From Haliotis cracherodii (taxonomy: Eukaryota): 64,000 nt of DNA. Where the stretch lies: positions 37,076,001 to 37,140,000 of the forward strand of contig NW_027266297.1 of NCBI RefSeq assembly GCF_022045235.1, read 5' to 3'. Within the stretch, counting starts at the first letter, position 1. The number at the start of each line of letters is the position of its first letter. Shown piece by piece: positions 41,301-58,731 of this stretch. A program made the position numbers and the translations under genes. The notes beneath the pieces are model-generated. The model saw only the letters and a program-made list of their open reading frames with translations, was not told the origin of the DNA and did not search any database.

Positions 41301-44300
41301 GTAATGAAATGGAAGAATTTCCTGTCGAGTGGATAAGATCATGAAAATGTCCTGGGCCCACTTGCACAAAGCCACCTTAGTGGTAAGACCATCGTAACTC
41401 CCATACTTTAACATAGACTTACAATAGTGTTCGCACTAAGATTGGTTTGTGCAAGTGGGCCTTGATGTCAGTGTCTCTACCACACTCACTGTACACCGGT
41501 ACAGTCTGTGAAGCCTATTCTTGATGTCCCCCGCCGTGATGTGACTGGAATAGGGCTTATAGAGATGTAATACGCCACTCACAGAACTGCGATTAGCATG
41601 ACAGTAAGGTATGTGATACATGAGGTTTGGTTGTCATGACAAGTCTCATTACTTCCATATGATCATATGATCATATGATGTCTGTCTTTCAGAAACCAAG
41701 GAAGTCTTGACCGTGTCTGTACCATCGGAGCCTCCGTCAGTGAAACTTCCTTCAAGGTATGTTGAGGCTTGATTACACTAATTGTATTGTTGTGGTATAG
41801 GCAGAAGTCACAAAGTGACTTAGACAGGCTTTCCTTCAACACTGATGCCTGAGTATTTTCACTGACATTTACCAATTAATGACAAAACCAACAATCAGTC
41901 AAGTGTGACTTTATTCTTTTCACGATATGCTGCACATGATTTCCAAACTTAACACGCTGATCCTGCACGAGACAAAAGTGATGTGATGTGTTCATGAGCA
42001 TCGGTTCACACAACATATCACTATGTTCATTGTGCATCAAACCAATCTAATATCTCTTGAATATGAGTAAGTCTTCATATAATAACCAACATGTGTGGTA
42101 TTTGCGTTTCATTTGGTGGTGTGTATATTATCACATTGGAAACATCTCTTCTTAACATACATACTTCTCTATATATTTCTATGGTTCATGTTTCTTTTGG
42201 TGGTGAGTATCTATCAGTGTAAGACATTAACAGATATCCTAGGCCTTTGATGTAGTTTGATTATTTGATCTAATACTCTCCCAAAAAGTTTTCTGATTGC
42301 TCCATGCTTTCTCTTGTAATGTCTAATGCAGGACCGCCTCCGTGGTCTAGTGGTAGAGTGTCCGCCCGGAGAGCGGAAGGTCCGGGGTTCGATCTCTGCG
42401 TCATACCAAAAGACGTTAAAAGATAGTACTTGTTGTTACCCTGTCAGGCGCTCGGCATTAAGGGGCTTAAACAAGGACTGGTCGGCTCAGAGTCTGTATA
42501 CAGTGTCTTGAGTGGGGTATTCATGTTAAACTGTGGCATGGTATCTCAGTGTGCTAGCACTATAAATCGGCATCACTCTGGACTTGTACAAGCAGCCACA
42601 GACACACGTGCATGCACGTCGCTATATAAGTGCAATAATCTTGGACTCGACGTTAAACCCAATTTCACCTCACCTCACCTCTAATGCAGGATCATACAAA
42701 TACTTTATCTGAACTCTCAAAGGGAGATAAGCCTGACTGTATCTGTCCCTTGATCAATGTTGTTGTTTTTCCAGCAGCCAGCCTGTGGATGTGGCAGCCG
42801 TGGACAAGATCGTGCAGCCGGCGGACGAGGTTGACGGGGACAGCTCCAAGGTACTGTCCTCCCCTTCACACTTCATGGCACTGGCAGGAAGGATCACAAA
42901 CAGTCTAACGCTAGTCTCAAAGTCTGACTCATTGAAGGAAATAGTACCTAGATCTAGGGGCAAACAGACTTGTGCAGCCTTTTTTCCAAATGTGTATTGT
43001 CTTTGGTCCATATATCACATCAGCTCCTTTTATCTCATTTGCTAAGATAATGACTGGTATGGCTTAGATTTAGCTAAGTAAACATTAGTACTCAGGCACC
43101 ACTTGCATAAGCATCAAAAAGCTGATATAAATTTATTCTCTTTTTGTTTTGAGAAGAAAAGGTCACTGCCAACACCAGTTGTTCAAACCTTTTTGCCAGA
43201 AAAGTGGCCAAGTTGTTGAGCTTTCGACTGTTACGATCATGCCTGCCACACGTTGTTTTGATATTTTGGTCACCAGGCACCTATCTTACTTTTCTGCAAT
43301 TACTCATCGCTGATAGGAAGCGATGTTACTCATAGTGACATGATTGAGGTTTTCTCTCAGATTGTCCTTCACATACATTATGGGTTAGTTCAATGGATTG
43401 GAAAGTAAGTTATTAGAAGAAGGGATAATCCAGAAAAATATATTTGTGCTTTAACAATCCAGTATTATTATGATTGACATAACCTGTATTAGACAGATTG
43501 TACATAAATATCCTCACCATTACACCTGTAGTGGTCTGATTCATTTACTGTCTTAGGATCCAGGGTCCTCAGAGTCCATCAGCTAGAACTTTGGAGGGAT
43601 TCTGAAATAATATTGACATGTGTTTATTTCTTATGCCACCAGTCCTCATGTATTTCCTTGCCACGTCTTATTGCAGACCTCGGGGGCGGAGTTTGTACTG
43701 CCTGGCAGTATGAGCCCCGGGAAGAGTGACAATATGTCTCCCACAAGCACACTGACCGAGGGTAAACTACTGACTACCCCACTTAGCATGACACGGCTTA
43801 CGTAGCAGCCTGCTTGTGGGCTGCCGCCCCGGCTGTAGCCTCAGTGCCTGCTGGCTCAGCATCTAATACTCCATTAACTGCTCGCTCATCATTTTCTTGC
43901 AACCATGTCAGAATCATAGTGGAAAAGCCCATTGATAAGATAATTATTGAATATTTTAAATAATTTTTTTAGAGGTTTTTACAATGACTTTTTGGAAGTT
44001 TATACCAAATAGGTACTACAGCATATTAATCTCTAGTGTACATACTGTGTAAGATTTTTTTTTTTTTTTAAATATCAATATCTACAGGCATTTTGATAAG
44101 GTGAATTTGACAATAATATTATATTTTTAATGTATTATATCAGTGTTTGGTGTTAGGATGAACATTGTGTCTTGTCCATTCCTGATGTTTACAAGTTCAA
44201 TTTTAGATTTTGCAAGGCTAACTACAAGTTCAATTGCAGTTTTGGGTAAAGCAGGGATGCATTTAGTGATCACAACTTAATATGCAAGTGCAATATGAAT

Positions 44301-47300: not shown

Positions 47301-50300
47301 ATTGGGTTCCGAACTAGTGGGTTATATTTTTTTCAGGGTTCAGTACTTGAGCCTCCAGGATAACAGTCCTGAAACACTGGCCACATAACAAGCCCTTACT
47401 GTAGCAGCACTAACCAAGCATGACAACACATATCCACCCCAGTATTGAAACATACTAAATCACTTCAAGCTGTTCTGTTATTTGGTACTGGCTGATTTCT
47501 TCATAAACCAACAAAAATTCCAAATTTACAATGATGTGCATGCTTATGGTTCATCTGTGAATATTATGTTCAGAACTACCTAGAACTCCTGCTAGATTTA
47601 TAATGCTGTCAGGTTTTGTTCTCAACCATTAGGATATGAGTTAGAATTGGTCTTAAGCAACCCATGCTTGTCGTCAGAGGCGATTAATGGGATAAGGTGG
47701 TCAGACTCGCTGACTTGGTTGATGCATGTAATCATATCCCAATTACTTAGATCAATGTTCACTATATCAATCACTGGGTTATCTGGTCAAGACTTGATTA
47801 TTTACAGACCTCCGTCCTATAGCTATAATATTGCTGAGTGCGGTGTTAAATAACAAACAAACAAATATCTCGCCAGTATACAGAGACCCTGGTCGTAAGA
47901 GGCAACCAAATGGATCAGCTGGCCAGACTGTTGATGGTGTGTCATCGTACCCGACAGCGTGGATCGTTCACAATACCAATCACTGGATTGTCTGGTCCAG
48001 ACTAATTATTTAGAGCCTGCAAACAAACATCTGAACGAAGGTGTTGTTTTGCTGAATGAAACATTATTAACTTTGTGTTCTGTGTTGATATCATGAGACT
48101 TTACATCTTTCTACATGGCCATGCTGGAATGTAAATATGCAGGTTATAATTTACATTATGCTAATTTGAAATTTTGTTTTATGTTTAAGAAGAGGTCAGC
48201 CTAAACCTGTTTGGTATTGCATGAATACTGCATGATTGCATGCCCACACTCACTCACTCACTCCATGTGAAGTCGTGGACTGAGATTAAACCTTGTGAAT
48301 CTTGACTAAGTCAGTAGACCAACACAGTAATGAGAATGCCTTCAGTGTAATTGCATGATTATATTAAATTAAACCCAATTACCTCACATTTTGAAAAAAG
48401 CTGTAAAAATAAGACATGGTGGAGAGACAGGACATTTCGTCATGGCGTGCTGTGATTTGCTTCTTTGAGACTCTAGAGTAAGGTCGGTATTTCAGGAGAC
48501 GATGAGTGGAATGATTTAGATCTCCAATCGGATGATGAGTTGCCGGATAATTTGCTTCCGGACGACTCGACTACTCCCGGCTCGGCCAATCATCAAGCTG
48601 TGCTTACTCCACACTGCATGGCAGGTAATATCAACACCACCTGTTCAAGTGATATACCCATGTTATCTACCAGAATACAGCGCTGTGAAAACCAAGCATA
48701 TGTACAAGAAACATCCATGTCTTTACAAGAAACTAAAGTACCAACAAGTAGACCCAAAGTCTTTCTCCTCTTCTTGCCCATTTCACAAAGCAGTCTTAGC
48801 ATTACAACTACCTTACTTTACCACTGACTGATAGTCGAAGTGCGCAACTTCTTTGTGAAACAGGCCCCAGATTTGTTTAATGGATCAATCATAATTAGGT
48901 GTATATGATTGTTTTATTTTTGTCAGCACTCTTTATGGGCACAGTTTTATGCAGATTGTAACATTTTTATTTGACCGTATTTTGTTTATATGCACCGTTT
49001 CAATAGTTGTTACTAAAATACAACAAAACATTTCCAGCTTGTAATACATGCAGATACATACCAAACAAACTTTGAACAACAAACGCAACATTCAGACACA
49101 TACCAAACAAACTTTGAGCAATAAACACAACATTCAGACACATACCAAACAAACTTTGGACAACGAACACAACATTCAGACACATACCAAACAAACTTTG
49201 AGCAATAAACACAACATTCAGACACATACCAAACAAACTTTGGACAACGAACACAACATTCAGACACATACCAAACAAACTTTGAGCAATAAACACAACA
49301 TTCAGACACATACCAAACAAACTTTGGACAAAGAACACAACATTCAGACACATACCAAACAAACTTTGGACAACGAACACAACATTCAGACACATACCAA
49401 ACAAACTTTGAGCAATACATACAACATTCAGTTTCACATACAAACGAAACTTTGAACAATAAACACAAAAGAGACAAGTATGGCTATGATTAATGTTGAT
49501 TATATGTTTCTCTATGGGGAAATGAGGGTGTATGTTCCAGGACGTCTGTGTGTTAAGGAATAAATAGTTGCGGTGTGTTAACTTGCTGTCCATCTCCCAA
49601 CAGAGTTGTGCAGTCATGAGAGTTGTCTGCCCTTTATTGAGGTGGAGGAGAGTGAGATGGCGTATACATGTATTGTTAGCAGCACCACAGTGCGTAAGTG
49701 GCCTTCAAGTGATGTGTTACCTTGGCTGTGTCACCTCCCTGCCCTTTACTCAAAACTGCTGGAAAACTGTTACCCACTTCGTACTGGTAGTGTGATACCT
49801 CGCGAGAAAAAAGATTCAACTCTTCAGAATCACTTGACTTGGGTGATTTATGGCCTTAACAAGGTAAAATTCAAGTCATAAGAACAACACTTTTTTTTGT
49901 CTGCTCAAACTTCATGGCAAACCTGTCCCAATGTTATGTAGAACACTAATAATGATGTGAAGACCTAGTCTGAAACTAGACAACAGACTGTGGAGCATAG
50001 TCTTTCTGTAAACATTAATGTTGTACCAGCTCAAGTATGTTAGAAATACAAGTGCAGAAAGAAACACTGCTGCATTAAATGTATCTTGAAGTTGAACCAT
50101 TTGACCCTATTCAGAAACTTTAGATTTAGAATATACAAATCAAGTTTTGGTTAAATTTATAGATGGATAATATACCTAACTGTGATGAAGCAGCTGATAG
50201 TTTAAGCTTGAATTAATAATGCATTTCCCTGCTGTCGCAGTGTTTGATTCTAAGACTTGTGATGGCCACAACTTGACTCTGATGGGTCATAGTTTACCAG

Positions 50301-53300
50301 CAACACAATGACGGTGATTCCCTTCTCACACAAGGTGCCTAATGCACTCTTCATCTGCAAAGTGTCCAATATTTGTTCAAGCAAGGCTTTGCTTTCAAGG
50401 TGTCAACTTTTTGAAGCAACCCTTTACTTACATGGCGTCCACTTTTTTGAAGCAATCATTTACTTACATGGCGTCCACATTTTGAAGCAACTCTTTACTT
50501 ACATGGCGTCCACTTTTTGAAGCAACCCTTTACTTACATGGCGTCCACTGTTTGAAGCAATCCTTCACTTACCAGATATCAAGTTCCAAGTCACATTAAC
50601 CCAACTTTTTTTTCAGACTGTTTTGCAGTGGATTTAACAGTTTGCATTTCAGATAGGAAGATGCAGCGAAACTCTTGGCCATGGACTGTACTCATATTAG
50701 TGTTGATACAAACTAGCAAAACTACAGCCATTTGAAAGAGTGATCAACAGGTTTTTGTATTTCAACATTAATGTGAACAAACCAGAGACCAGATTTCCCT
50801 TGCTTATTAAAGTCCTATGGTAGATCATACCCCCTGTTTTGATCTGCTATTTTACATTGGGTCTCTAGGGGGTTCTTTAGAAGGATAGACACCAGTTATG
50901 TTGAGTGTACTGTTGTGTTCCCTTATCCAACAAGCAGTGGTGTGCTCAGCTGATTCCCATACTCCAGACTTGTAGGTACTCCCGTTTAGGTATGCCACAT
51001 GGGAATACGTCCTCAAGTCAAACTATTATCTGGAACTCTCAAGTTAGAACAGTAGCTTGGAATATATTTACACAGATTGTATCCTAAATTTCCTGGGTAC
51101 CTTTAAGATGAGGAAAATTGTTGGCTTCAGCTGTTGATTGGTCAAATTGGGATGGAAACCGGACAGTGACATGATTTGCATTAAACCCTAAATGTTAGAA
51201 CCATGAGAATAACTTTACAAGGAAATACAACGGAAAGCATGCTGAAAAGGCATTACCCAATTTGACTCGAATGAAAACCTAGGAAGAATTGGTGTTTTGG
51301 TTTTGGTTTTTAGAACTTTGTACTCTGTTTCAGCCCTCCAGTTCCCCCACTTCCCCTATTGACAGGTAACAGTGTGTAGATATAACTACTTATCTACCTA
51401 CCACGGTGACAGGGCTTTACGTATGTCATATATACCAGGTTGTAGTGGTTGATGAGGCTCACCCTGTGGCAGTCACGACGGTGCAAATCATGTGCAGTGA
51501 GAGATTGACAGATCACCAACATGCATGCATGCACTTACCTGCAGGCAGGGAAGATGACTGAAATATGATTACCGTATTCAACGTAATAAGAGCCTACGGC
51601 GATATTTGCCAATATTTGGACAAGTGAACAATCCCAATTAGCACCCCTTCCGATTGATCAATTTACACAAAACTTATTTATTCGCGTATAATACGCACTC
51701 GTGTGTCACAAGCACCCTTAATAATGGGCAATTAAATTCTGGAATAATATATCTGTCGTATATAAACATTTCAGGCTGTCAGCATAAACCACAAAATTTA
51801 TCTTTCAACTCAGTTTTTTTTTCACCCAAATAATATTCTAATAAGAGCCCCCTATTTCTAATTTTGAGAGCGCCCTAGGCGCTTATTAAGTCGAATACGG
51901 TAGTCATTGTTTGCTACAATACTTTTTTTTGTTTAACTGAAAATGCAAACATATTCAAAGTTTGTTTGTGTTTGAACTGTTTCAGTTATTTTTTCTACAA
52001 ATTAAGACATGGAATAAGACTTGTTTGTGTCAGATTAGTCCCATGGTTCTCATGATTTGGTTGACCCCTGTCAAGATCCGGGTTAGAATTGGCCTTCAGA
52101 GGTGACCAGCAGGATCAGGTGGTTGGGTTCACTGACTTGGTCGATGCATGTCATTGTATCCCAATTGCGTAGATTGGTGCTCATGATTTTCAGACTGCTG
52201 TCATATAGCTGGAATATTGCTGAGTGCGACATTGAATAACAAACAAACTGGACTGGACAGGACTGGACTGGTTGACTGGACTTTGGTTGTAAGAACAATG
52301 CAAAACTGGACCAGAGCGCCCTGGACTGTTCGACTGGACCTCGTTACTTTGGACTTAGCCTGTACAACTGCCCATAATGGAGAATCCTAAGAGGCACTAC
52401 TGTATTTGCTGTGATATGCGCCCTGGGCACCTAGAAAAGTGACAGAGGGTCGCTAAACTATACACAACAAATTAAATTTGTTCAGGAGATCGATCCATTG
52501 TGGATAAACTTAGTTCAAACATCAATGAAACTAATATTTTTTCAATGATAATTACTGGGCAGTTAAAATTACCCCCTTCTCTGTAATATGCACACAGAGA
52601 TATGGACATCATGTGAATTATCAGTCTTAGGGAGGCTTATAAAGATTTTTTACAAGTTGGTCAGGGGACACTTTTTGGAAAGGGGCACATAATATGGCAA
52701 ATACAGTAACTGTAAAGAATTAGAGAAATGTAATGGTTGTATCCACACAGTTCATAACATAGATTAGCTTGTGTAACAAGTTGGTGAACCAACAGATGTA
52801 CCAATATCACAACTACAACCCGTATTACTAAGCATTGCACAAGGTACACTCGGCTGGTAGGGACTGCAGGTCAAAATACGTCCTCACTACCCCATGCTAG
52901 TCTTTGAGTGGTGATGATGAGTTTGTGGTCATTACCATGATTACAGTTTGTGACATGGCTGGTAGTGCCCCAACAGTGGGCTGGTTGATCATGCTTTCAA
53001 TGACAGTCAGACTCTGGTTATTTCCTTGCTGCTATAACATAGCTGTAATATTGCTGACTGTGGTATAAAACATCATTCACTCACTTAATGAGTTCACACT
53101 TACGGAACACAGTTTGCACTAACATTGCACAGTGATTTGCACCCCGTTACAAGTACTGCGTTGTGGATTTTTCAGCAGTCTAGTTTGGACTGTTGTGTTG
53201 TGGCGGTGATGAAAGATGATGTTTCAAGGGTTGATGCATGCGAAGGGTCTAGGGTCAGTGGGGACAGGTCAGTGGCTTCATTCACTCATTTCTAGATGGG

Positions 53301-56300
53301 TCAGCAAGGATCATACCTACAATTTGTAAGGACAAACTTTTATTCTTGGATCGCACACCTATGTAGGTTGAACCCTGCAGTTTGCAGGTGAAATGTTGAA
53401 ATACAGGTCACCAAGGCAGCAGTTATCCAACTTACTATATTTTTTGGTTGTGAATCTCACAGGGACATAATTAATTTTATGTTTTGATGCTAACAGCTGA
53501 TCAATTGTACATTACATGAGCCCTTATGTAAAATAGCCATGAAGAGTATTGGCGATTCGTATGAAAATTACTTAAAACTGAAGTAGAGTCTCTTTACTTT
53601 ACACAAATACTGATATATATATATCTTTTTCATGTTTGTTCATAGTGTAGCATGTTCCAAAGATTTTTGGGTGCTTTCAATGTCAATGTCGGGGCGGTGG
53701 GGTGGCCTAGAGGTTAAGGTGTTTGCTTGTCACGCCGAAAATCTGGGTTCGATTCCCCATATGGTTACAATGTTTGAAGCCCATTTCTGGTGTCACCCGA
53801 TGTGATATTGCTGGAATATTGCTTAAAGCGGCATAAAACCATTCCCACTCACTTTATTTTTAATTCACATTTTAAGATTAAATTTAAAGTATTTTTTCTT
53901 GCAAAAAGTCATGTGAAAATTACTTTTATGAAGTAAACAATGCCATTGGTAAAGTTAAATATGGTTTTATTGCAGAGTTAATATCCAGGGATGAAAATTT
54001 TCCTCCGATTTCGTTCCGTCAACTGTCACTATTGTGAAATATGACATTTCAGTACACAAGGGTCTCCCAGAACCCCAGCTAAATTTCAGTGTGCTTTTTT
54101 AAAAAAAAACCCGACATTCTCATCCCTGAGTATCATTCTGAAAGTCTGATTCCTGGAACTGTTAACATGTCGGGATGGGGCGATGAAGGTAGGAACAGCT
54201 TCCCATTGATAGAAATTAGTGAGTGAAAAAGCTACCTGTCAACCTCAGTCTGCATGTACAGTCTGAGAAATGCATGTTTTGTTGGTTGTTTTTCTGTTAT
54301 CCTGTTTTTGTGCAAGACAGTTGTCTGGCTACATTGTTTGCAGTGTAGATTAATACATTGTGCTTTATACCCCTTGTGGGCTATGCTTCCTGATGATAAT
54401 CAGCAGTGTTGAGCCATGTTTGAATCACCTAACAGGTGCTTGTTTCATGATGTCATTCATTAGCTTGTGCATGTCATTGCCTTTCATTTCAGAATTCCAT
54501 AAGCTTGTGTGTCATTGCTATTAGAAGCTACGGTTTGAGTAGCTGATGACCGCAAACAGGTGCTCAATTCAGGATGGGAATATTAAATGACTAATTGTAT
54601 TACGACCTTCATCAGGTAGCAGTGTATTCATTTAAGATTTTAATCCTTCTTTTGTAATGTCTTATAGAAGTTGAATAGAGTTTGAATATAGATATAGAAT
54701 TACAACAAATATGAGTTATTAATTATTGCTAAATGCCGCATCAGCCATCCCGTTGCTTGGTTTCCCTTTCATATCCTGGATTTATCAACCCTTGAAGTTC
54801 CGGGGTAGAATAGGTCTTCTCCAACCCATACTTGCCGTAAAAGGCGACTATGATTGTCGTAAGAGGCGACTAACGGGATCGGGGGGTCAGACTCGCTGAC
54901 TTGGTTGATGCATGTCATTGATCCCAATTGCGTGGATTGATGCTTATGATGTCAATCACTGGATGGTCTGGTACAGACTTGATTATTTACAGACCGCCGT
55001 CATATAGCTGGAATATTGCTGAGCGCGGCGTTAAACAACAAACCAACCAACCAACCAACCAACCTGGATTTATCTCTATTCATTATCATCAGTATTCATT
55101 AGATGTGTGTCCTTGATTGACCCAAGATACCATTCCAAGGTTTATTTAAAGAAGACTGTTTCTTGTGATCTTAGAAACAAATTTGCTTCCAAATGGATTT
55201 TGGTATTACCTCCCCTTTGTTCATCAGTTCAGTAACCGTAACCATGGTTACATGGTGTGTATTCTTGTTGTTTCAGGGCAAGCAGTAGTGAAAGTGAGTC
55301 AGAGCAGCAGTACTTCCAGACCCGCCTCTAGTCCAACGCCCCCACCCCGCCCGACCACACCTGATGCCCCATCCTCTGCAGCACTTGCATCTAGTCCAGC
55401 CCTCACCAAGAGGTCATCCGTCCAGGAGCCCAAGCCTAAGCCTACTCTGAGTCTGATAGCATGTGGAGATGTCGACTCATCTGTAAACCTGGGCAGTGAA
55501 CACTACGCCTTCTTGCCACCTAGTCCTATCAAAGTTGTCATCTCGGAGGCTGGAGATTCCGACGACGCCCACACGGAAGAGATCCAGGTGCGAGCTCCGC
55601 GGAAACCTCTTCCCTCCGAGACATCACCATTGCCTGCAATGGCTGCAGTGTCTACAACCAAGTCGCCAACTCGTCAGGGCTCTCCACCCAAAAGGGTTAC
55701 TCGTTCAGGATCAGGGTCAATAACTAAGTCAGATAGTCAGCACAGGTCCTCAGGTACTTCTGGAACCTCTTTACCCAGCTTGCCCTCGAAACCTGAATCT
55801 CGACGATATACATCTCAGACAGGGAGCTCCCCGAGGAAGGGTTCCATGGGGTCCAGTCACCCTGTCCGAACATCTGTCACCACCGTGCCAACATCCTCCA
55901 GGGTCTGTCTGAGTCGGTCTATGACTGCTGGAGCTCCTGCCTCCGTACCTAGAAGGTTGGCGACCTCCAGCTCCATGACCTCAAGGTCACACACAAGCAG
56001 TTCCCTGTCAAAGTCATCTGCCCCTGCGAGACGAAGCCTGGAACTGACATCTTCCCCATCGCGACAAATGCAGACGACAAGTGTAGGATCGTTACATTCT
56101 CGTCAGCGTCACTCGTCCGGGGGTGAGGGTGTCAACAGGTCTCCCCCTAAATCAGTAGAACGGAAGAACAGCGGCAGTTCAGCATCAAGTGGTTCAGGAA
56201 GGAGGAGTCACGACCGTTGTCATAGAGACCATCCAACTTCTGGATCCGTTACCGAGACAAATGTCACTTCCTCCACCTCTTCCGCAACCCCCTGCACCAA

Positions 56301-56334
56301 GATCAGTCAGGACAGAACGCCCCGATTTGTTTAA
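13502..56334 (+). CDS. ARHGAP45: Rho GTPase-activating protein, ARHGAP45/ARHGAP29/GMIP family (F-BAR + RhoGAP), 31 exons, about 1354 aa
   Basis: join(13502-13594,16825-17071,18139-18282,19489-19576,20066-20126,21811-21883,22936-23073,23849-23913,24460-24504,25069-25134,25690-25770,27631-27777,28397-28474,29008-29067,30179-30235,30813-30952,31928-32028,32827-33027,33402-33457,33856-33987,34266-34403,35523-35579,37241-37359,37826-37906,39003-39084,39887-39989,41693-41756,42775-42850,43677-43761,48496-48624,55277-56334). All introns are GT-AG and the frame stays open. Family motifs: LAFSSSVSEYLMG, GLDLALQRAKAWSKY, TLCESSKTYEPGSQY, GMYRVSG, LKLYLRQLPEP, NLGIVFGPTL, C-terminal PRFV. The symbol is the closest vertebrate family member; the gene is probably a co-orthologue of all three. 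Confidence 0.9.
15432..15803. repeat. Minisatellite, 25-bp unit (GACATGGTCCCAGCTCTCTCRAGAC), about 14 copies
   Basis: Directly visible periodicity. Confidence 0.93.
16825..17071 (+). CDS. RhoGAP exon 2
   Basis: ttgcag|GAA ... ACAG|gtactg; DIIALTTDVKSFSDALAKLK. Confidence 0.85.
18139..18282 (+). CDS. RhoGAP exon 3
   Basis: ttgtag|AA ... AAAA|gtaggt; AHERLGEVICILKNVLNRYPALHS. Confidence 0.9.
18430..18650 (-). mobile_element. Family C copy, antisense (rare orientation)
   Basis: Reverse-complement of the family C consensus; followed by a diverged + fragment 18666-18830. Confidence 0.75.
19023..19353. other. Assembly gap (N run)
   Basis: Run of N inside intron 3; flanking exons are phase-compatible, so no exon need be missing. 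Confidence 1.
19489..19576 (+). CDS. RhoGAP exon 4
   Basis: cgaag|GT ... AG|gtagga; FCDAIDQLALAFSS. Confidence 0.88.
19730..19895 (+). mobile_element. SINE family A
   Basis: tRNA A/B boxes, shared tail, (ACTC)n. Confidence 0.85.
20066..20126 (+). CDS. RhoGAP exon 5
   Basis: ctgcag|T ... AAG|gtgagt; VSEYLMG. Confidence 0.88.
20428..20775 (+). mobile_element. SINE family B nested in a family C copy
   Basis: Full length, TSD CTCACAATATYA. Confidence 0.88.
21060..21405 (+). mobile_element. SINE family B
   Basis: Full-length similarity to 42332-42680. Confidence 0.85.
21540..21780 (+). mobile_element. SINE family D
   Basis: Similarity to 31010-31289, (ACTC)n tail. Confidence 0.8.
21811..21883 (+). 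CDS. RhoGAP exon 6
   Basis: ccccag|TCC ... CTG|gtgagt; SYDNLTSL. Confidence 0.82.
22008..22708 (+). mobile_element. Helentron-associated non-autonomous element (HINE/DINE-1-like)
   Basis: 5' TTATACCCCCG with nearby inverted CGGGGGGTATA, (GTCY)n microsatellite, internal tandem repeats of about 165 bp, 3' CGGGGGTAT plus GTGAGC-TTT-GCTCAC hairpin and CTTGTT end. Confidence 0.75.
22936..23073 (+). CDS. RhoGAP exon 7 (start of F-BAR)
   Basis: gatag|GC ... TAG|gtgagg; EAGLDLALQRAKAWSKYARDIMTYIEKK. Confidence 0.92.
23085..23555 (+). mobile_element. Family B SINE interrupted by a 5'-truncated family C copy
   Basis: TSD AGTTGCTATATAA at 23289-23301 and 23511-23523. Confidence 0.8.
23849..23913 (+). 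CDS. RhoGAP exon 8 (F-BAR)
   Basis: tttcag|AA ... GAG|gtatgt; ECEYSKNLSRLA. Confidence 0.9.
24460..24504 (+). CDS. RhoGAP exon 9 (F-BAR)
   Basis: ttgcag|GGT ... CAG|gtaaat; GFLPLQSVYCTVLAQ. Confidence 0.88.
24560..24840 (+). mobile_element. SINE family D, diverged
   Basis: Similarity to 31010-31289. Confidence 0.75.
25069..25134 (+). CDS. RhoGAP exon 10 (F-BAR)
   Basis: tactag|GAC ... GAG|gtgtgg; DIEFASNCQATQALLQTSKFIE. Confidence 0.88.
25690..25770 (+). CDS. RhoGAP exon 11 (F-BAR)
   Basis: aacag|CCA ... ATG|gtgagt; PLAARRAEHDKVRKSVKEIW. Confidence 0.9.
25820..26077 (+). mobile_element. Family C copy
   Basis: Consensus similarity, (AAAC)n tail. Confidence 0.8.
26205..26463 (+). mobile_element. 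SINE family D with internal deletion
   Basis: Similarity to 31010-31289. Confidence 0.8.
26763..26993 (+). mobile_element. Family C copy
   Basis: Consensus similarity, (AAAC)n tail. Confidence 0.8.
27631..27777 (+). CDS. RhoGAP exon 12 (F-BAR)
   Basis: ttccag|CAA ... AAA|gtgggt; LRKAQHMYIARQQDYEKA. Confidence 0.9.
27973..28087. mobile_element. Palindromic MITE, about 115 bp
   Basis: About 40-bp terminal inverted repeats CCAGGGCCCAMTTGCACAAAGCRATCTTAGCGCTAAG. Confidence 0.85.
28397..28474 (+). CDS. RhoGAP exon 13 (F-BAR)
   Basis: ttgtag|GCT ... AAG|gtaggt; AAEAETTYKACV. Confidence 0.9.
28745..28885 (+). mobile_element. SINE family A
   Basis: Consensus similarity. Confidence 0.8.
29008..29067 (+). 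CDS. RhoGAP exon 14 (F-BAR)
   Basis: tttcag|GCA ... TCT|gtaaat; IREQIQMCDQVMKS. Confidence 0.88.
29208..29452 (+). mobile_element. SINE family B with internal deletion and expanded (CA)n/(CT)n
   Basis: Head and V-like core followed directly by the microsatellite segment. Confidence 0.8.
29770..30157. repeat. Degenerate C-rich minisatellite (about 16-bp CCCCACAGTGCC core)
   Basis: Visible periodicity; abuts the exon 15 acceptor. Confidence 0.85.
30179..30235 (+). CDS. RhoGAP exon 15 (F-BAR)
   Basis: ttgcag|GTG ... CAG|gtatgt; VTVEYFQLLHTVSAPLPVQ. Confidence 0.9.
30813..30952 (+). CDS. RhoGAP exon 16
   Basis: cctcag|TTC ... AA|gtaagt; FHTLCESSKTYEPGSQYAEFV. Confidence 0.9.
31010..31289 (+). 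mobile_element. SINE family D, full length
   Basis: tRNA-like head, shared tail, TSD CTTGTATAGAGAG (30997-31009/31290-31302). Confidence 0.9.
31458..31701 (+). mobile_element. Family C, full length, nested in an older family C copy
   Basis: TSD ACAGTAGCAATCACTG (31442-31457/31702-31717). Confidence 0.9.
31928..32028 (+). CDS. RhoGAP exon 17
   Basis: tttcag|G ... AAG|gtgagt; Ser-rich linker, phase 2-1 consistent. Confidence 0.82.
32345..32540 (+). mobile_element. SINE family A
   Basis: Full length, TSD CACCTCACAGGG. Confidence 0.9.
32827..33027 (+). CDS. RhoGAP exon 18
   Basis: cttcag|AC ... ATG|gtttgt; SDTDSASGSSS...SQSLDEL. Confidence 0.85.
33402..33457 (+). CDS. RhoGAP exon 19
   Basis: ttgtag|GT ... 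GTG|gtaggt; needed to bridge phase 1 to phase 0. Confidence 0.78.
33856..33987 (+). CDS. RhoGAP exon 20 (start of GAP domain)
   Basis: catcag|CCA ... AAG|gtaggt; TFGVDF...VPPIVSMCLSEVELRGL. Confidence 0.93.
34266..34403 (+). CDS. RhoGAP exon 21 (arginine finger)
   Basis: acccag|GGA ... CAG|gtatgg; GMYRVSG (catalytic Arg intact), ISNVLKLYLRQ. Confidence 0.95.
34614..35021. mobile_element. hAT-type MITE
   Basis: TIR TAGGGCTGGGAC, TSD CTGCTKAG. Confidence 0.85.
35238..35441 (+). mobile_element. Family C with internal deletion
   Basis: Head and tail intact, middle missing. Confidence 0.82.
35523..35579 (+). CDS. RhoGAP exon 22
   Basis: tttcag|CTT ... AAG|gtatgt; LPEPLLTFRFYSDFI. Confidence 0.93.
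36045..36214 (+). mobile_element. SINE family A
   Basis: Full length, TSD TTATTGACTGCT. Confidence 0.9.
36378..37245 (+). repeat. Compound tandem array of the exon 23 splice acceptor plus (ACTC)n
   Basis: Repeated AGATGTGGGCCCACTGTTTACCTCTGTGACTGTTTCAG|G. Confidence 0.92.
37241..37359 (+). CDS. RhoGAP exon 23
   Basis: tttcag|GAA ... AG|gtaaat; LVRMLPPSNFKTCAVLMHHLQR. Confidence 0.9.
37826..37906 (+). CDS. RhoGAP exon 24
   Basis: tatcag|G ... GC|gtaagt; NQMSSSNLGIVFGPTLLRP. Confidence 0.94.
37889..38600 (+). repeat. 24-bp minisatellite made of the exon 24 end plus splice donor, about 30 copies
   Basis: Unit AACACTACTCCGACCAGC|GTRAGT. Confidence 0.95.
39003..39084 (+). CDS. RhoGAP exon 25 (end of GAP domain)
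   Basis: atgcag|G ... CAG|gtatct; SLASLVDTPHQTRAIELLI. Confidence 0.92.
39210..39437 (+). mobile_element. Family C copy
   Basis: Consensus similarity. Confidence 0.78.
39887..39989 (+). CDS. RhoGAP exon 26
   Basis: ttacag|ACC ... CAG|gtagtc; TIFGPG. Confidence 0.85.
39998..41010 (+). repeat. 55-bp minisatellite, about 18 copies
   Basis: Unit CACTCATCCTACAGTACACGAACTGTGAGTGGGGCAGTCTAGTGGATAGAGTGTT. Confidence 0.95.
41057..41220 (-). mobile_element. SINE family A, antisense, young
   Basis: Near-consensus sequence, TSD TCAGGGTTTCAG. Confidence 0.9.
41351..41465. mobile_element. Palindromic MITE (same family as 27973-28087)
   Basis: GGGCCCACTTGCACAAA ... TTTGTGCAAGTGGGCC. Confidence 0.8.
41693..41756 (+). 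CDS. RhoGAP exon 27
   Basis: ctttcag|AA ... AG|gtatgt; phase 1-2. Confidence 0.75.
42332..42680 (+). mobile_element. SINE family B, full length
   Basis: TSD CTAATGCAG. Confidence 0.9.
42775..42850 (+). CDS. RhoGAP exon 28
   Basis: ttccag|C (NAGNAG alternative at 42778) ... AAG|gtactg; phase 2-0. Confidence 0.78.
43677..43761 (+). CDS. RhoGAP exon 29
   Basis: ttgcag|ACC ... AGG|gtaaac; phase 0-1. Confidence 0.78.
45468..45765. repeat. About 100-bp tandem repeat x3, diverged
   Basis: TGCATGTCTCTC..GTGGGCA..AGTGGT.GAACCATAGACTGCACC occurs three times. Confidence 0.85.
46459..46731 (+). mobile_element. Family C, full length
   Basis: Consensus similarity. Confidence 0.85.
47630..47865 (+). 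mobile_element. Family C copy (older fragments at about 47030-47240 and 47880-48030)
   Basis: Consensus similarity. Confidence 0.75.
48496..48624 (+). CDS. RhoGAP exon 30
   Basis: tttcag|GA ... CAG|gtaata; DDEWNDLDLQSDDELPDNLLPDD, phase 1-1. Confidence 0.75.
49050..49465. repeat. 42-bp minisatellite, about 10 copies, two alternating variants
   Basis: ACATTCAGACACATACCAAACAAACTTTG(AGCAATA/GACAACG)AACACA. Confidence 0.93.
49604..49693 (+). CDS. Candidate symmetric cassette exon (90 nt, phase 1-1)
   Basis: gtccatctcccaacag|AG ... GC|gtaagt; open in the required frame (ELCSHESCLPFIEVEESEMAYTCIVSSTTV); no homology support. Confidence 0.45.
50408..50572. repeat. About 35-bp minisatellite x5
   Basis: TTTGAAGCAACCCTTTACTTACATGGCGTCCAC. 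Confidence 0.9.
51314..51365 (+). CDS. Candidate frame-shifting mini-exon (acceptor 51314 or 51334)
   Basis: ttttggtttttag| and ctgtttcag| acceptors, AG|gtaaca donor; encodes ...PSSSPTSPIDR and ends in phase 2. Confidence 0.4.
51570..51902. mobile_element. Tc1/mariner-pogo-type MITE
   Basis: TA-flanked TIR CCGTATTCRAC.TAATAAG; second copy at 61036-61341. Confidence 0.78.
52064..52247 (+). mobile_element. Family C copy with deletions
   Basis: Consensus similarity. Confidence 0.75.
53690..53853 (+). mobile_element. SINE family A
   Basis: Consensus similarity. Confidence 0.85.
54787..55062 (+). mobile_element. Family C, full length
   Basis: TSD CCTGGATTTATC (54775-54786/55063-55074). Confidence 0.9.
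55277..56334 (+). CDS. RhoGAP terminal coding exon (Ser/Pro/Thr-rich disordered tail ending DRTPRFV*)
   Basis: tttcag|GG; long GC-richer ORF; C-terminal PxFV as in vertebrate ARHGAP29/45. Confidence 0.88.
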
Positions 56335-58731
56335 TACTCTATTTTAGGTATATCAAAATCTAGTGCTTAGCTGTTGCTAGTGTTGTGTCATATTGTTTGT
56401 GAAAATCGTGAACAGTGTTTATTTAGCTGAAAGCATTGCAATCCCCTTTTTTCTGATGACCCCCACAGGTTGAGGCTGAATCATGGAAGTATTGACTGTT
56501 TTTAAACTTTTTTTGATTTATGTCCAAATTGAGTTGATTTGGATACATTTGTTGTATAGTTTGAAATGTACGTGTATTTGTTCTTGTTATTGTAGATATA
56601 TTACTAATCATAGGCACATGGAACTTATCCATAGCTGATATTTATTTATGCAATCAAAGCTTATTTTTTGTATCAGGCATGTACTTTTGTAAATGGCATG
56701 AATCATAAATTGGATAGATTCTGTGGTATCATTTACAGAAATGCCTGCCAGTAGCTGTAGGAGAAGTGTGTTTGAACAAAGTGCGTAGTTGTGATGTAGA
56801 TTACTGCAATGATGACGGGGCACAGGAATCATGTTAGTGCTATTTGATTGATACTTTCTGTGCCACCTGTCACTGAATGCATATTTCATGTTATGCCGTA
56901 TTTTACCTAATGAGCATCCGATGTGTTATTGGTTGCCTCCCAAACAATTAATGTGAGATTTGATCATCCCTCCCTGTACATTATACTGTGAATTGTACAT
57001 GCATTAACATCGTTTACGATGCCTTAATCTAGGTTCTGTGAAAGAATTCATGTTTCAGTTTGTTTAGCTGCACATTTTTTTGGAAAGGTCAGGGGAGTGG
57101 GGCAGCCTTGTTACGGTTTGCTCATCCAATTGCATTCTGGTGTCCCCCGCCGTGATATTGCTGGAATATTGCATAAGGCGGCGTAAAACTGTACTCACTC
57201 ACCTATCCAACTGCAGCTGCAGTTAGTTTTGGATCTGGCCATTATAAATGTCAAACACAATTTTACCTTGAAAGGGCCACTTTGGTATGTAATGTATGTC
57301 CTGGGTGCTTACTGAGTAGAATACAGTGTGTTTATTGCACACATGGAATACAGGGATGATATTGAAACTTGAAAATAGTTCTTGTTCTAAGGAAACTGTT
57401 GCTATAACATATGCAGTGTTCCATCATCGTTGAAAACTAGCTCCCGAAGTATTGATCCCCAATAACAGGTGCCCCCTCCCTCCGTGTGGTTACTTGGTCC
57501 AGCAGGTGCCCATGCACATGCACCCTCCCTCAATCAGGATTCCTGGGTTCCCGGATTAAACACTGCATATGTATAGGAATGGAATAGAAAAATGGCATAT
57601 GACAAGTCAAACAAGTATCTGAAATGTGATATGGTTGTGTCTTCCAATAGCCTAGACAAGAAATGATGCCATTTGTGATATTGTCAAATCTAAGAGATTT
57701 ACTATGCGTTACGCCAGTTTGATATTATTTTGCTGAACTATGGTAGATATTATTGTGTAGATTGACGTTGGTGATGAGTAGCGTGGTGCTTAGAAAAATC
57801 TCATCAAAACCCTCCACACGCAGCCCAGCGTGGTTACCTTGCTATGTAATGACTCTTCAGTAGAGGGTATAATTATTACACAGCATATAGAATATATGAT
57901 AGTTGCATGGCCACATACTTAACAGACCTGCGCTGGTACCACTTCCTGATTGATGACGGCCATTTATCAGGTAGGATTCAGTAGCTGTATCTACCCATCT
58001 GCATCTGCATACATTTCCATACAGCCACAATGTTATTTGTCAATCCCTGATTGGACATTATGCTCACAGTGCCAAGGCCATTTCATATACTCTCAGTAGT
58101 GCATAGAGACGGATACAACAGCCAGTAGGTCATTATCACATTGTTCACATGTCGAAACCTGTAGACAGTTGGAATTCCTGCTGTATTATTCTTATCATAT
58201 AGAGCTTAAGTTTATGTATTTTGTATACAATTAGGCAAAGGATGTATGCATGTTATTAAATTGTTCATATATTATGAATATGTATATCAATTGTTTTAAC
58301 ACTAACCCCATCAATTTTTTCTGTATGTAGTTAAAAGGGTGCTTTCATTTCATTCATTGTGCATATTAACAATTTCGTATAAGGTTACAATTAACTAGTA
58401 CAGTTTTTTTGAATGGGTGACATAGTATTCAGCCACTTTCTGAATGTTTCCCAAAATTTATTAAAGACTTTGTGTACAGTTCTAGATATTTTTCTATATG
58501 GGTGCTTTAAGTTGTTTACACACATACTTTATTATCATAAGGGAAGGGGATAGTGCTCCTGTATTATGTTAAAGGCAGAGAAATGTCCCCTCTAATGTAG
58601 CACTCAAGCCTGGAGGACCTGTTTCTTCATCCTGTCTGTCTAGGAGATGGAACTATGCACCTGGGTAGAGTGAAGCACCACCCTGTCTTTCTTGTCATGT
58701 ATCCTCTACTTCCATGTGTCTTTTGGAGTGC

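What the first reader, a model, noticed from the sequence alone, without database searches (positions are those of the whole stretch)
51314..55331. Dual-frame terminal exon: two alternative C-termini, each ending in a PDZ-ligand-like motif
Seen: entered in phase 1, the exon at 55277 encodes a tail of about 350 aa ending DRTPRFV*. Entered in phase 2, the same bases read ASSSESESEQQYFQTRL* (stop 55329-55331). Seen: a mini-exon with good signals (51314-51365, 52 nt, phase 1 to 2; or 50653-50687 plus 51334-51365) performs exactly this shift and gives the coherent peptide PSSSPTSPIDR-ASSSESES. Established: ARHGAP29/PARG1 binds a PTPN13 PDZ domain through C-terminal PQFV, x-T-x-L is the class I PDZ consensus, and a stop in the last exon escapes EJC-dependent NMD. 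Inference: a splicing switch removes the disordered tail and swaps PDZ partners.
Basis: partly seen in the sequence, partly recalled or inferred. Interest (0 to 1): 0.78.

Follow-up and report, generated by a model that had tools for sequence, protein, structure and literature searches.

The report
Tail-switching mini-exon in abalone RhoGAP

Summary
The window is Haliotis cracherodii. The gene is the RefSeq "rho GTPase-activating protein 45-like" gene of the ARHGAP29/45/GMIP family.

Public RefSeq isoforms of relatives show that the core mini-exon 51334-51365 is genuine.
- H. rufescens X4 ends …HCMA-ALQFPHFPY*. Gigantopelta X3 ends ALQFPDFPY*. Pomacea X4 and X5 end ALKFPNFPY*. The window encodes LQFPHFPY* exactly, with its TGA at 51360-62.
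- H. rubra X4 ends …SK-PSSSPTFPIDR-ARSSESESEQQYFQTRL*.
- Splicing 42850 directly to 55277 gives GKQ*. So relatives' models use all three frames at the start of the last exon.

Transcript contigs from 4 of 4 runs show no spliced mini-exon. One 4895-nt contig skips it.

The TRL frame cannot be conserved outside Haliotis.

Verdict: this is a conserved, stop-carrying tail-switch exon. It removes the 352-aa tail and its ancient …PRFV end. The dual-frame PDZ swap is probably a by-product. The idea is ordinary in kind and is not described in the papers I searched.

The parts
42775..42850 (+). Exon 'a'. It has tandem (NAGNAG) acceptors at 42775 and 42778, ends …DGDSSK in phase 0, and has its donor GT at 42851-52. 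In relatives it is the upstream partner of the mini-exon (TRL* isoform) or of 55277 (GKQ* isoform).
   Evidence: sequence. P0001 and P0002 differ by one Ser here. H. rubra X4 and the X5/X6 isoforms continue from …SK.
43677..43761 (+). Exon 'b'. It is 85 nt, moves the phase from 0 to 1, and encodes TSGAEFVLPGSMSPGKSDNMSPTSTLTE.
   Evidence: sequence. It matches P0001 residues 931-958.
48496..48624 (+). Exon 'c'. It is 129 nt, keeps phase 1, and encodes GDDEWNDLDLQSDDELPDNLLPDDS…LTPHCMA. It is a cassette exon, skipped in isoform X3.
   Evidence: sequence. P0003 (X3) lacks these 43 residues.
51334..51365 (+). Conserved 32-nt alternative mini-exon 'm'. The acceptor is ...ctgtttcag and the donor is acag|gtaaca. 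In phase 1 (after exon c or b) it reads (A)LQFPHFPY*. In phase 0 (after exon a) it reads PSSSPTSPID and leaves 2 nt over.
   Evidence: It is identical to the C-terminus of H. rufescens X4. It is 8 of 9 identical to G. aegis X3 and 7 of 9 to Pomacea X4/X5. It matches H. rubra X4 in phase 0.
51360..51362 (+). TGA stop of the short …FPY* isoform, 3 nt upstream of the last exon junction.
   Evidence: translation of 51336-51365 reads LQFPHFPY*Q.
51314..51333 (+). It is unsupported.
   Evidence: The peptide it would add (…LCTLFQ…) occurs in 0 of 177 proteins. The signal pair is not beyond chance.
50653..50687 (+). It is unsupported.
   Evidence: The donor act|gtactc scores -4.8. Its peptide occurs in 0 of 177 proteins. 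X1 and X5 have zero depth here, and the depth in X4 and X6 comes from unspliced contigs.
55277..56334 (+). Coding part of terminal exon 't' in the main frame (phase 1). It encodes a 352-aa Ser/Thr/Pro-rich tail ending DRTPRFV*.
   Evidence: It is 100% identical to P0001 residues 1003-1353. Transcript contigs lie on 55274/55276-56400 in X1, X4 and X6, and from 55279 in X5.
55277..55331 (+). The stretch read in three frames in relatives' isoforms. Phase 1 gives the long tail. Phase 0 gives GKQ* (stop at 55286-88). Phase 2 gives ASSSESESEQQYFQTRL* (stop at 55329-31).
   Evidence: H. rufescens X5/X6 end GKQ*, H. rubra X5/X6 end GKK*, and H. rubra X4 ends …QTRL*.
56335..57163 (+). 3' UTR, at least to about 57163. 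The contigs of X1, X4 and X6 all end there, at the edge of a dispersed repeat.
   Evidence: In one search, records 8, 15 and 31 run 763-765 letters beyond 56400. One search shows the sequence.

Best explanation
Bases 51334-51365 are a conserved 32-nt alternative cassette exon of the Haliotis cracherodii ARHGAP29/45-like RhoGAP gene.

Three optional exons lie between exon a (ends 42850, phase 0) and the terminal exon t (55277). They are b (85 nt), c (129 nt) and m (32 nt). Their combination sets the C-terminus:
- a-b-c-t or a-b-t: t is entered in phase 1. This gives the 352-aa disordered tail ending in the ancient …DRTPRFV motif, the counterpart of the PDZ-binding end of vertebrate ARHGAP29/PARG1.
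- …c-m-t or b-m-t: m is read in phase 1 and stops at its own TGA, 3 nt before the last junction. The protein ends …MA-ALQFPHFPY* and lacks the tail and the FV motif. This is the conserved, presumably selected product.
- a-m-t: m is read in phase 0 and t in phase 2. The protein ends PSSSPTSPIDR-ASSSESESEQQYFQTRL*.
- a-t: t is read in phase 0 and the protein ends GKQ*.

Shown here: the sequence features in the window, and the matching isoforms in relatives.

Inferred: that H. cracherodii itself splices this way, that FPY* is the functional short form, and that its effect is to uncouple the GAP from a PTPN13-like PDZ scaffold. I read TRL* and GKQ* as tail-less by-products of combined exon skipping, not as a designed second PDZ ligand.
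For: - Gene identity. The tail is 100% identical to XP_071119563.1 of H. cracherodii. Pfam finds RHG29_45_N, GMIP-like FCH and RhoGAP.
- The window's 51336-51362 translates to LQFPHFPY*. This is identical to the end of H. rufescens X4, …HCMAALQFPHFPY (P0011). Gigantopelta aegis X3 ends …HFMAALQFPDFPY (P0018). Pomacea canaliculata X4 and X5 end …ALKFPNFPY (P0144, P0141). That is 4 of 177 fetched proteins. They come from 3 of the 6 gastropod genera whose isoform clusters I listed.
- H. rubra X4 (P0014) gives the a-m-t product with the TRL* end. The X5/X6 isoforms give GKQ* or GKK*. The window reads the same.
- The one mini-exon difference inferred between H. cracherodii and H. rubra (PTSP versus PTFP, most simply tcc to ttc) is silent in the FPY frame (ttc to ttt).
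- The TRL frame is not conserved beyond Haliotis. The first 18 main-frame residues of exon t are almost all different in Gigantopelta, so the overlapping frame must differ too.
- The dominant transcript skips m. X1 contig 8 (4895 nt) lies on 55276-56400 and runs on for 3007 letters with no piece in 50450-55275.
- The FV end is conserved from cnidarians to chordates.
Against: - There is no direct RNA evidence for m inclusion in H. cracherodii. None of the 4 runs laid (X1, X4, X5, X6) shows it spliced. All depth over m is explained by unspliced intronic contigs in X4 and X6, or is zero in X1 and X5.
- Contigs drop rare variants. The joint table was swamped by repeats (208 joints not shown).
- The H. 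cracherodii isoforms in the protein collection (X1-X3) all have the long tail.
- The relatives' isoforms are computational RefSeq models. I could not see the read support behind them.
Per-frame substitution rates are therefore untested.
- The three FPY-frame replacements among genera (Q to K, H to D, H to N) can each be made by a first-position change, which is a third position in the other frame. That is also compatible with some constraint on the phase-0 reading. By chance it is about 1 in 8.
- The function of …FPHFPY is unknown.
Confidence: 0.8

Rival explanations
1. A frame-shifting mini-exon is entered from 48624. It is either 51314-51365 (52 nt) or 50653-50687 plus 51334-51365. It moves exon t from phase 1 to phase 2 and gives …ELCTLFQPSSSPTSPIDR-ASSSES…QTRL*.
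For: The frames are open and the arithmetic is right. The 51314 acceptor and 51365 donor score about as well as the gene's real donor on a crude matrix.
Against: Neither extra peptide occurs in any of 177 family proteins. Relatives enter m at 51334. From exon c that reading stops inside m. The 50687 donor is poor. A comparable chance candidate arises in 17% of shuffled introns. No contig shows it.
Confidence: 0.03
2. The a-m-t isoform ending …QQYFQTRL* is a regulated, functional product in abalones. Its T-x-L end is a class I PDZ ligand, so exon choice re-targets the GAP to a different PDZ scaffold.
For: H. rubra X4 carries exactly this end. Its stop is at the same place, and 16 of 17 residues are identical to the window's reading. 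TRL fits [ST]-x-[VIL]. The base rate of that pattern among random open stretches here is 88 of 2584, or 3.4%. Some bivalve short isoforms also end in PDZ-like -TTV or -SSI.
Against: It is annotated in 1 of 4 Haliotis species and 1 of 177 proteins. Once the FPY peptide is fixed, no stop codon is possible in phase 0 of m, so that frame is forced open by the genetic code. Seventeen open codons in a random frame have a probability of about 0.44. Between H. cracherodii and H. rubra there are 2 inferred differences in the 55 overlapping bases, about the average for the tail. The frame cannot be conserved in Gigantopelta.
Confidence: 0.12
3. m is a conserved 'poison' cassette. Its role is to lower output of the long isoform through unproductive splicing. 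The short peptide itself has no function.
For: m carries an in-frame stop and is deeply conserved. It is absent from the dominant transcripts. Inclusion would leave a 3' UTR of about 1.9 kb, which can trigger decay independently of exon junctions. That last point is recalled background.
Against: The stop lies 3 nt before the last junction, well inside the 50-55-nt window that escapes junction-dependent decay (recalled rule). The same 9-residue architecture follows either exon b or exon c in Pomacea. Short tail-less isoforms are common as annotated proteins across molluscs.
Confidence: 0.12
4. The mini-exon isoforms are annotation noise. They would come from spurious low-level splicing picked up by the gene-prediction pipeline, with no biological role.
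For: They are model (XP_) proteins. No spliced m appears in 4 runs of contigs.
Against: Independent annotations of three gastropod lineages give the same 9-residue end with 7-9 of 9 identities. The tail that follows in the genome is barely alignable between those lineages: 35% identity between Haliotis and Gigantopelta.
Confidence: 0.05

Closest known systems
Vertebrate ARHGAP29 (PARG1) and its C-terminal interaction with PDZ4 of PTPN13/PTPL1
   Same: The domain set is the same: RHG29_45_N, GMIP-like FCH and RhoGAP. The long disordered tail ends in x-F-V. The PARG1-PDZ4 interaction is listed in a PTPN13 review table (PMC7763032, passage seen). The original paper, Saras et al. 1997, appears in the reference list of PMC12240320.
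   Different: That the human end is 'PQFV' is recalled. No paper in the library search linked it to PARG1. The abalone end is PRFV. No C1 domain was detected at E<=0.01. Binding to a mollusc PTPN13-like PDZ domain is untested.
Plasma-membrane Ca2+-ATPase (PMCA/ATP2B) 'site C' splicing (recalled, not checked here)
   Same: Inclusion of a small cassette exon changes the frame or introduces an early stop. One variant then keeps a C-terminal PDZ ligand and the other loses it.
   Different: The gene family is different. Here the conserved cassette carries its own stop 3 nt before the last junction. Two further exon-skipping combinations read the last exon in the other two frames.
NMDA receptor GRIN1 C2/C2' cassette (recalled, not checked here)
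   Same: Alternative splicing at the last exon exposes a second reading that ends in a PDZ-binding motif.
   Different: In GRIN1 the alternative end is conserved and has been shown to bind PDZ proteins. Here the TRL* end is confined to Haliotis models and is untested.
RefSeq isoform models of sister species (H. rufescens X4-X6, H. rubra X4-X6, G. aegis X3-X4, P. canaliculata X4-X6)
   Same: They show the same exon choices and the same peptides as the window encodes.
   Different: No such short isoform of H. cracherodii is in the protein collection searched. For this genome the mini-exon appears to be unannotated.

Membership tests
ARHGAP29/ARHGAP45/GMIP RhoGAP family | RhoGAP catalytic domain | tested here: met
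   PF00620 at E=7.8e-44 on P0001 residues 673-823. It also scores 5.7e-10 on the exon at 34206-34400.
ARHGAP29/ARHGAP45/GMIP RhoGAP family | N-terminal RHG29_45_N domain plus a GMIP-like FCH (F-BAR-like) domain | tested here: met
   PF24235 at 2.8e-39 and PF22699 at 5.8e-34.
ARHGAP29/ARHGAP45/GMIP RhoGAP family | C1 (phorbol-ester/DAG-type) zinc finger before the GAP domain | tested here: not met
   There is no PF00130 hit at E<=0.01 on P0001. The precomputed Pfam lists show PF00130 for arthropod and deuterostome relatives but for none of the listed mollusc proteins. This looks like divergence of the mollusc lineage and does not exclude membership.
ARHGAP29/ARHGAP45/GMIP RhoGAP family | Long-isoform C-terminus x-F-V | tested here: met
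   The window ends DRTPRFV*. Of the family proteins of 1100 aa or more, 74 of 94 end in FV, and 73 of all 177 end in P-x-F-V.
   The join is not seen in contigs of 4 of 4 runs, but contigs cannot show absence. It is present by homology in models of H. rubra, H. rufescens, G. aegis and Pomacea.
   Within Haliotis 16 of 17 residues are identical, but that is no better than the tail's average divergence. In Gigantopelta the overlapping main-frame residues are almost all different, so the alternative frame cannot be the same. No orthologous DNA was available.
Class I PDZ ligand | C-terminal [S/T]-x-hydrophobic-COOH | tested here: met
   …QTRL* fits the pattern. The base rate of [ST]x[VIL] ends among 2584 random open stretches of the window is 3.4%. 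…FPY* and …GKQ* do not fit.
Class I PDZ ligand | Binding to a PDZ domain | not testable with these tools
   This needs pull-down or peptide-array experiments.
NMD-targeting poison exon | Stop codon more than 50-55 nt upstream of the last exon junction | tested here: not met
   The TGA at 51360-62 is 3 nt from the exon end at 51365. The 50-55-nt rule itself is recalled.

The most novel reading that the evidence does not exclude
The first 55 bases of the terminal exon are truly used in all three reading frames. Combinations of three optional exons of 85, 129 and 32 nt (lengths 1, 0 and 2 modulo 3) act as a combinatorial code for the C-terminus, giving PRFV, FPY, TRL or GKQ. The TRL end would then be a working class I PDZ ligand, so the RhoGAP is re-addressed between PDZ scaffolds. 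A parallel exists in bivalves, whose short isoforms end in -TTV, -SSI or -ADV.
Probability: 0.12. Interest if true: 0.6.

Novelty: new member of a known kind. Interest (0 to 1): 0.35.

Why it matters
The finding locates a 32-nt conserved exon that the H. cracherodii isoforms in the collection lack. It corrects how that exon is read. It also shows that molluscs toggle the presence of an ancient C-terminal x-F-V motif on an ARHGAP29/45-type RhoGAP by splicing. In vertebrate PARG1 this motif is the handle for the PTPN13 PDZ scaffold.

This gives a simple, testable case of isoform-specific targeting of Rho inactivation. It also shows how exon lengths of 1, 0 and 2 modulo 3 let one terminal exon be read in three frames. 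The principle, splicing that adds or removes a C-terminal PDZ ligand, is well known, so this is an instructive example and not a new mechanism.

Tried and rejected
1. Chance test of the 52-nt candidate. I used a crude splice matrix whose frequencies I recalled, so it is only a relative ranking. With thresholds set just under the candidate's own scores, the intron 48625-55276 holds 21 acceptors, 8 donors and 8 pairs of 20-250 nt. One of those pairs is frame-shifting and open: the candidate itself. In 200 mononucleotide shuffles, 17% held at least one such pair. Signals alone therefore prove nothing.

2. RNA evidence. The look-up of sequencing runs listed 24 runs. None of the holders is on record as RNA. 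I laid 4 of the 24 (X1, X4, X5, X6), one per study, to spread tissues. The result was negative for a spliced mini-exon. Its limits are stated in the Against line.

3. Tail homology. A HMMER search of 1.84 billion representatives with the 351-aa tail gave 1 hit, the species' own protein. The tail evolves too fast for deep comparison.

4. A search with the last 57 residues of P0011 found only 2 clusters, both represented by long isoforms. It was not useful for finding FPY ends elsewhere. The cluster listings did that job.

The planned per-frame substitution analysis of m and of 55277-55331 could not be done. Only inferences from pairs of overlapping protein frames were possible.

6. Literature.
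- 'PQFV' gave 10 papers, none about PARG1 (listing). I read one passage, which concerned PKC alpha.
- ARHGAP29 + PDZ-binding + isoform gave 30 papers; I saw 10 in the listing, all on YAP/TAZ topics.
- Haliotis + alternative splicing + RhoGAP gave 1 irrelevant paper (listing).
So I found no description of this switch in those three searches. Supplements were closed and not consulted, and I do not expect them to bear on this.

7. The four earlier notes on this window concern tandem repeats and a retroposon at 29.7-41 kb. They did not affect this reading.

Full report
WHAT IS THERE

The window carries, on the + strand, a gene with GMIP-like FCH and RhoGAP exons. A HMMER search with the 351-aa translation of 55279-56331 found a single protein among 1.84 billion representatives. 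It is 100% identical over residues 1003-1353. That protein is XP_071119563.1, 'rho GTPase-activating protein 45-like isoform X2' of Haliotis cracherodii, the black abalone. It has RHG29_45_N, GMIP-like FCH and RhoGAP domains.

The 3' exons, read from the sequence and the protein, are these:
- a: 42775/42778-42850, ends in phase 0 with …DGDSSK.
- b: 43677-43761, 85 nt.
- c: 48496-48624, 129 nt, ends …HCMA plus one base.
- t: from 55277.

CHECK OF THE OBSERVATION

- The donor follows 48624 and the acceptor precedes 55277.
- The main frame ends DRTPRFV*, stop at 56332-34.
- The second frame from 55278 reads ASSSESESEQQYFQTRL*, stop at 55329-31.
- AG acceptors precede 51314 and 51334, and a GT donor follows 51365.
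- Bases 51334-51363 read PSSSPTSPID.

As a signal pair, the 52-nt candidate is not beyond chance. With thresholds set just below its own scores, 17% of 200 shuffled introns held an equally good open frame-shifting candidate. The 50687 donor is poor.

THE TURNING POINT

- H. rufescens X4 (XP_048256287.1) ends …LTPHCMA-ALQFPHFPY.
- Gigantopelta aegis X3 ends …HFMA-ALQFPDFPY.
- Pomacea canaliculata X4 ends …HCIA-ALKFPNFPY. Its X5 ends …TAPL-ALKFPNFPY, where the exon follows the b-equivalent.

The window's 51336-51365 translates to LQFPHFPY*Q. With the phase-1 base of exon c and the first two bases of the mini-exon, the first codon is Ala. So when exon m (51334-51365, 32 nt) is entered from exon c or b, it is read in phase 1 and terminates at its own TGA (51360-62), 3 nt before its donor.

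H. rubra X4 (XP_046545546.1) ends …DGDRSK-PSSSPTFPIDR-ARSSESESEQQYFQTRL. It arises when m is entered from exon a in phase 0, skipping b and c. The 32 nt then put exon t in phase 2.

H. rufescens X5/X6 and H. rubra X5/X6 join a directly to t and end GKQ* or GKK*. The window reads GKQ* at 55277-88. G. aegis X4 ends GE*.

So relatives' models use all three frames of the start of exon t. The frame is set by which of the three optional exons are included. Their lengths are 1, 0 and 2 modulo 3.

WHICH READING IS CONSERVED

The FPY* end occurs in 4 of the 177 proteins fetched. It is found in 3 of the 6 gastropod genera whose clusters I listed: Haliotis, Gigantopelta and Pomacea, but not Littorina, Babylonia or Biomphalaria. 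Identity is 7-9 of 9 residues. The tail that follows in the genome is only 35% identical between Haliotis and Gigantopelta.

The TRL* end occurs in 1 of 177 proteins. In Gigantopelta the first 18 main-frame residues of exon t (GGVRHAVVGSSLSQPTSS) differ almost entirely from the Haliotis residues (GQAVVKVSQSSSTSRPAS). The overlapping frame therefore cannot encode the same peptide there.

Within Haliotis, the H. rubra main-frame changes are A to E and V to A. Together with the S to R change in the TRL frame, they imply two base changes in the 55 shared bases. That is about the tail's average, so I see no sign of suppressed variation.

That m is open in phase 0 carries no weight. Given the FPY peptide, the genetic code leaves no possible stop in that frame (my inference). 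Seventeen open codons in a random frame are expected 44% of the time.

The one mini-exon difference inferable between H. cracherodii and H. rubra (S to F in phase 0) is silent in the FPY frame. Against my reading, the three FPY-frame replacements among genera (Q to K, H to D, H to N) can all be first-position changes, which are third positions in the other frame. Without DNA from the relatives this cannot be resolved.

EXPRESSION

The look-up of sequencing runs listed 24 runs, none of the holders on record as RNA. I laid 4 of them (X1, X4, X5, X6, one per study) on 50450-56400.

They behave as transcriptomes. X1 contig 8 (4895 nt, depth 19.2) lies on 55276-56400 and continues for 3007 letters with no piece in the 4.8 kb upstream. 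X5 has zero depth in most intron bins.

Depth in the bin 51246-51444 is as follows:
- X1: 0.41, all from an intronic contig at 51416-51591 (29 x 2.8 / 199 = 0.408).
- X5: 0.
- X6: 2.77, equal to one contiguous contig at 51286-51444 that runs through both mini-exon borders.
- X4: 9.63, equal to one contiguous contig at 51129-51569.

So 0 of 4 runs show m spliced in. The same bookkeeping excludes the 50653-50687 exon.

There are caveats. Contigs drop rare variants. 208 joints, dominated by intronic repeats, were not shown. In X4 and X6 the exon-t contig stops exactly at the acceptor (55274 and 55276). That indicates more than one upstream partner, and X4 has an unspliced contig across the acceptor.

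The H. cracherodii isoforms in the collection (X1-X3) all carry the long tail. X3 skips exon c.

HOW IT MOST LIKELY WORKS

The long isoform ends in …DRTPRFV. This x-F-V end is shared by 74 of the 94 family proteins of 1100 aa or more, from corals to amphioxus and vertebrate ARHGAP29. In human PARG1 the C-terminus binds PDZ4 of PTPN13. I saw the review table passage and the Saras 1997 citation in a reference list. The 'PQFV' detail is recalled and was not found in the library.

Inclusion of m, or skipping of b and c, yields tail-less proteins that keep the FCH and GAP domains but lose this handle. All three short forms place the stop in the last exon or 3 nt before the last junction. By the recalled 50-55-nt rule they should escape junction-dependent decay.

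I therefore read m as a conserved tail-switch exon (confidence 0.8). TRL* is a by-product, with a 0.12 chance of being a real PDZ ligand.

COMPARISON AND NOVELTY

Splicing that toggles a C-terminal PDZ ligand is a known kind. PMCA site C and GRIN1 C2/C2' are examples (both recalled). The isoforms exist as RefSeq models in sister species. I found no paper on them in three searches (listings only). The mini-exon appears unannotated in H. cracherodii. This makes it a new member of a known kind, of moderate interest.

Noticed in passing
window 42773-42778: Tandem (NAGNAG) acceptor, cag|cag, at the start of exon a. It explains the one-serine difference between RefSeq isoforms X1 (1354 aa) and X2 (1353 aa).
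   Followed up: partly
window 48496-48624: Exon c (129 nt, in frame) is a cassette skipped in isoform X3 of H. cracherodii, H. rufescens and H. rubra. It carries a conserved acidic motif, DLDLQSDDELPDxLLPDDS, and ends in LTPHC[MI]A, which is conserved in Haliotis, Gigantopelta, Pomacea and Littorina.
   Followed up: partly
proteins P0030, P0032, P0038, P0090, P0157, P0159, P0162 (bivalves): Bivalve orthologues have two kinds of short alternative C-termini after the b or c equivalents. One is a 9-10-residue aromatic end: VQLEYYGYL in Mytilus and VQLECYGLLY in Pecten. The other is PDZ-like: …EFITTV in Dreissena and Potamilus, …CTIVSSI in Pecten, and …YTVMADV in Mytilus. The tail switch may be a feature of molluscs as a whole.
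   Followed up: no
177 family proteins: The long-isoform end [DE]R-x-P-x-F-V is conserved from cnidarians (Stylophora …REPQFV) through spiders, echinoderms, hemichordates and amphioxus to fish and frog ARHGAP29 (…REAHFV). Of all 177 proteins, 81 end in FV.
   Followed up: partly
window 51445-52240, 53634-54031, 54629-55026: Intronic dispersed repeats attract contigs with summed depths of 10^4 to 4x10^5 in all four runs. They produce most of the spurious joints and loose ends. They look like the abundant retroposon family that earlier notes on this window mention.
   Followed up: no
window about 57163: The transcript contigs of X1, X4 and X6 all end 763-765 letters beyond 56400, where a copy of a dispersed repeat begins. 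The true poly(A) site may lie further downstream.
   Followed up: no
window 19023-19353: A run of 331 N (assembly gap or masked). It was left alone.
   Followed up: no
X6 contig 24 stops aligning at 50514 inside it.
   Followed up: no
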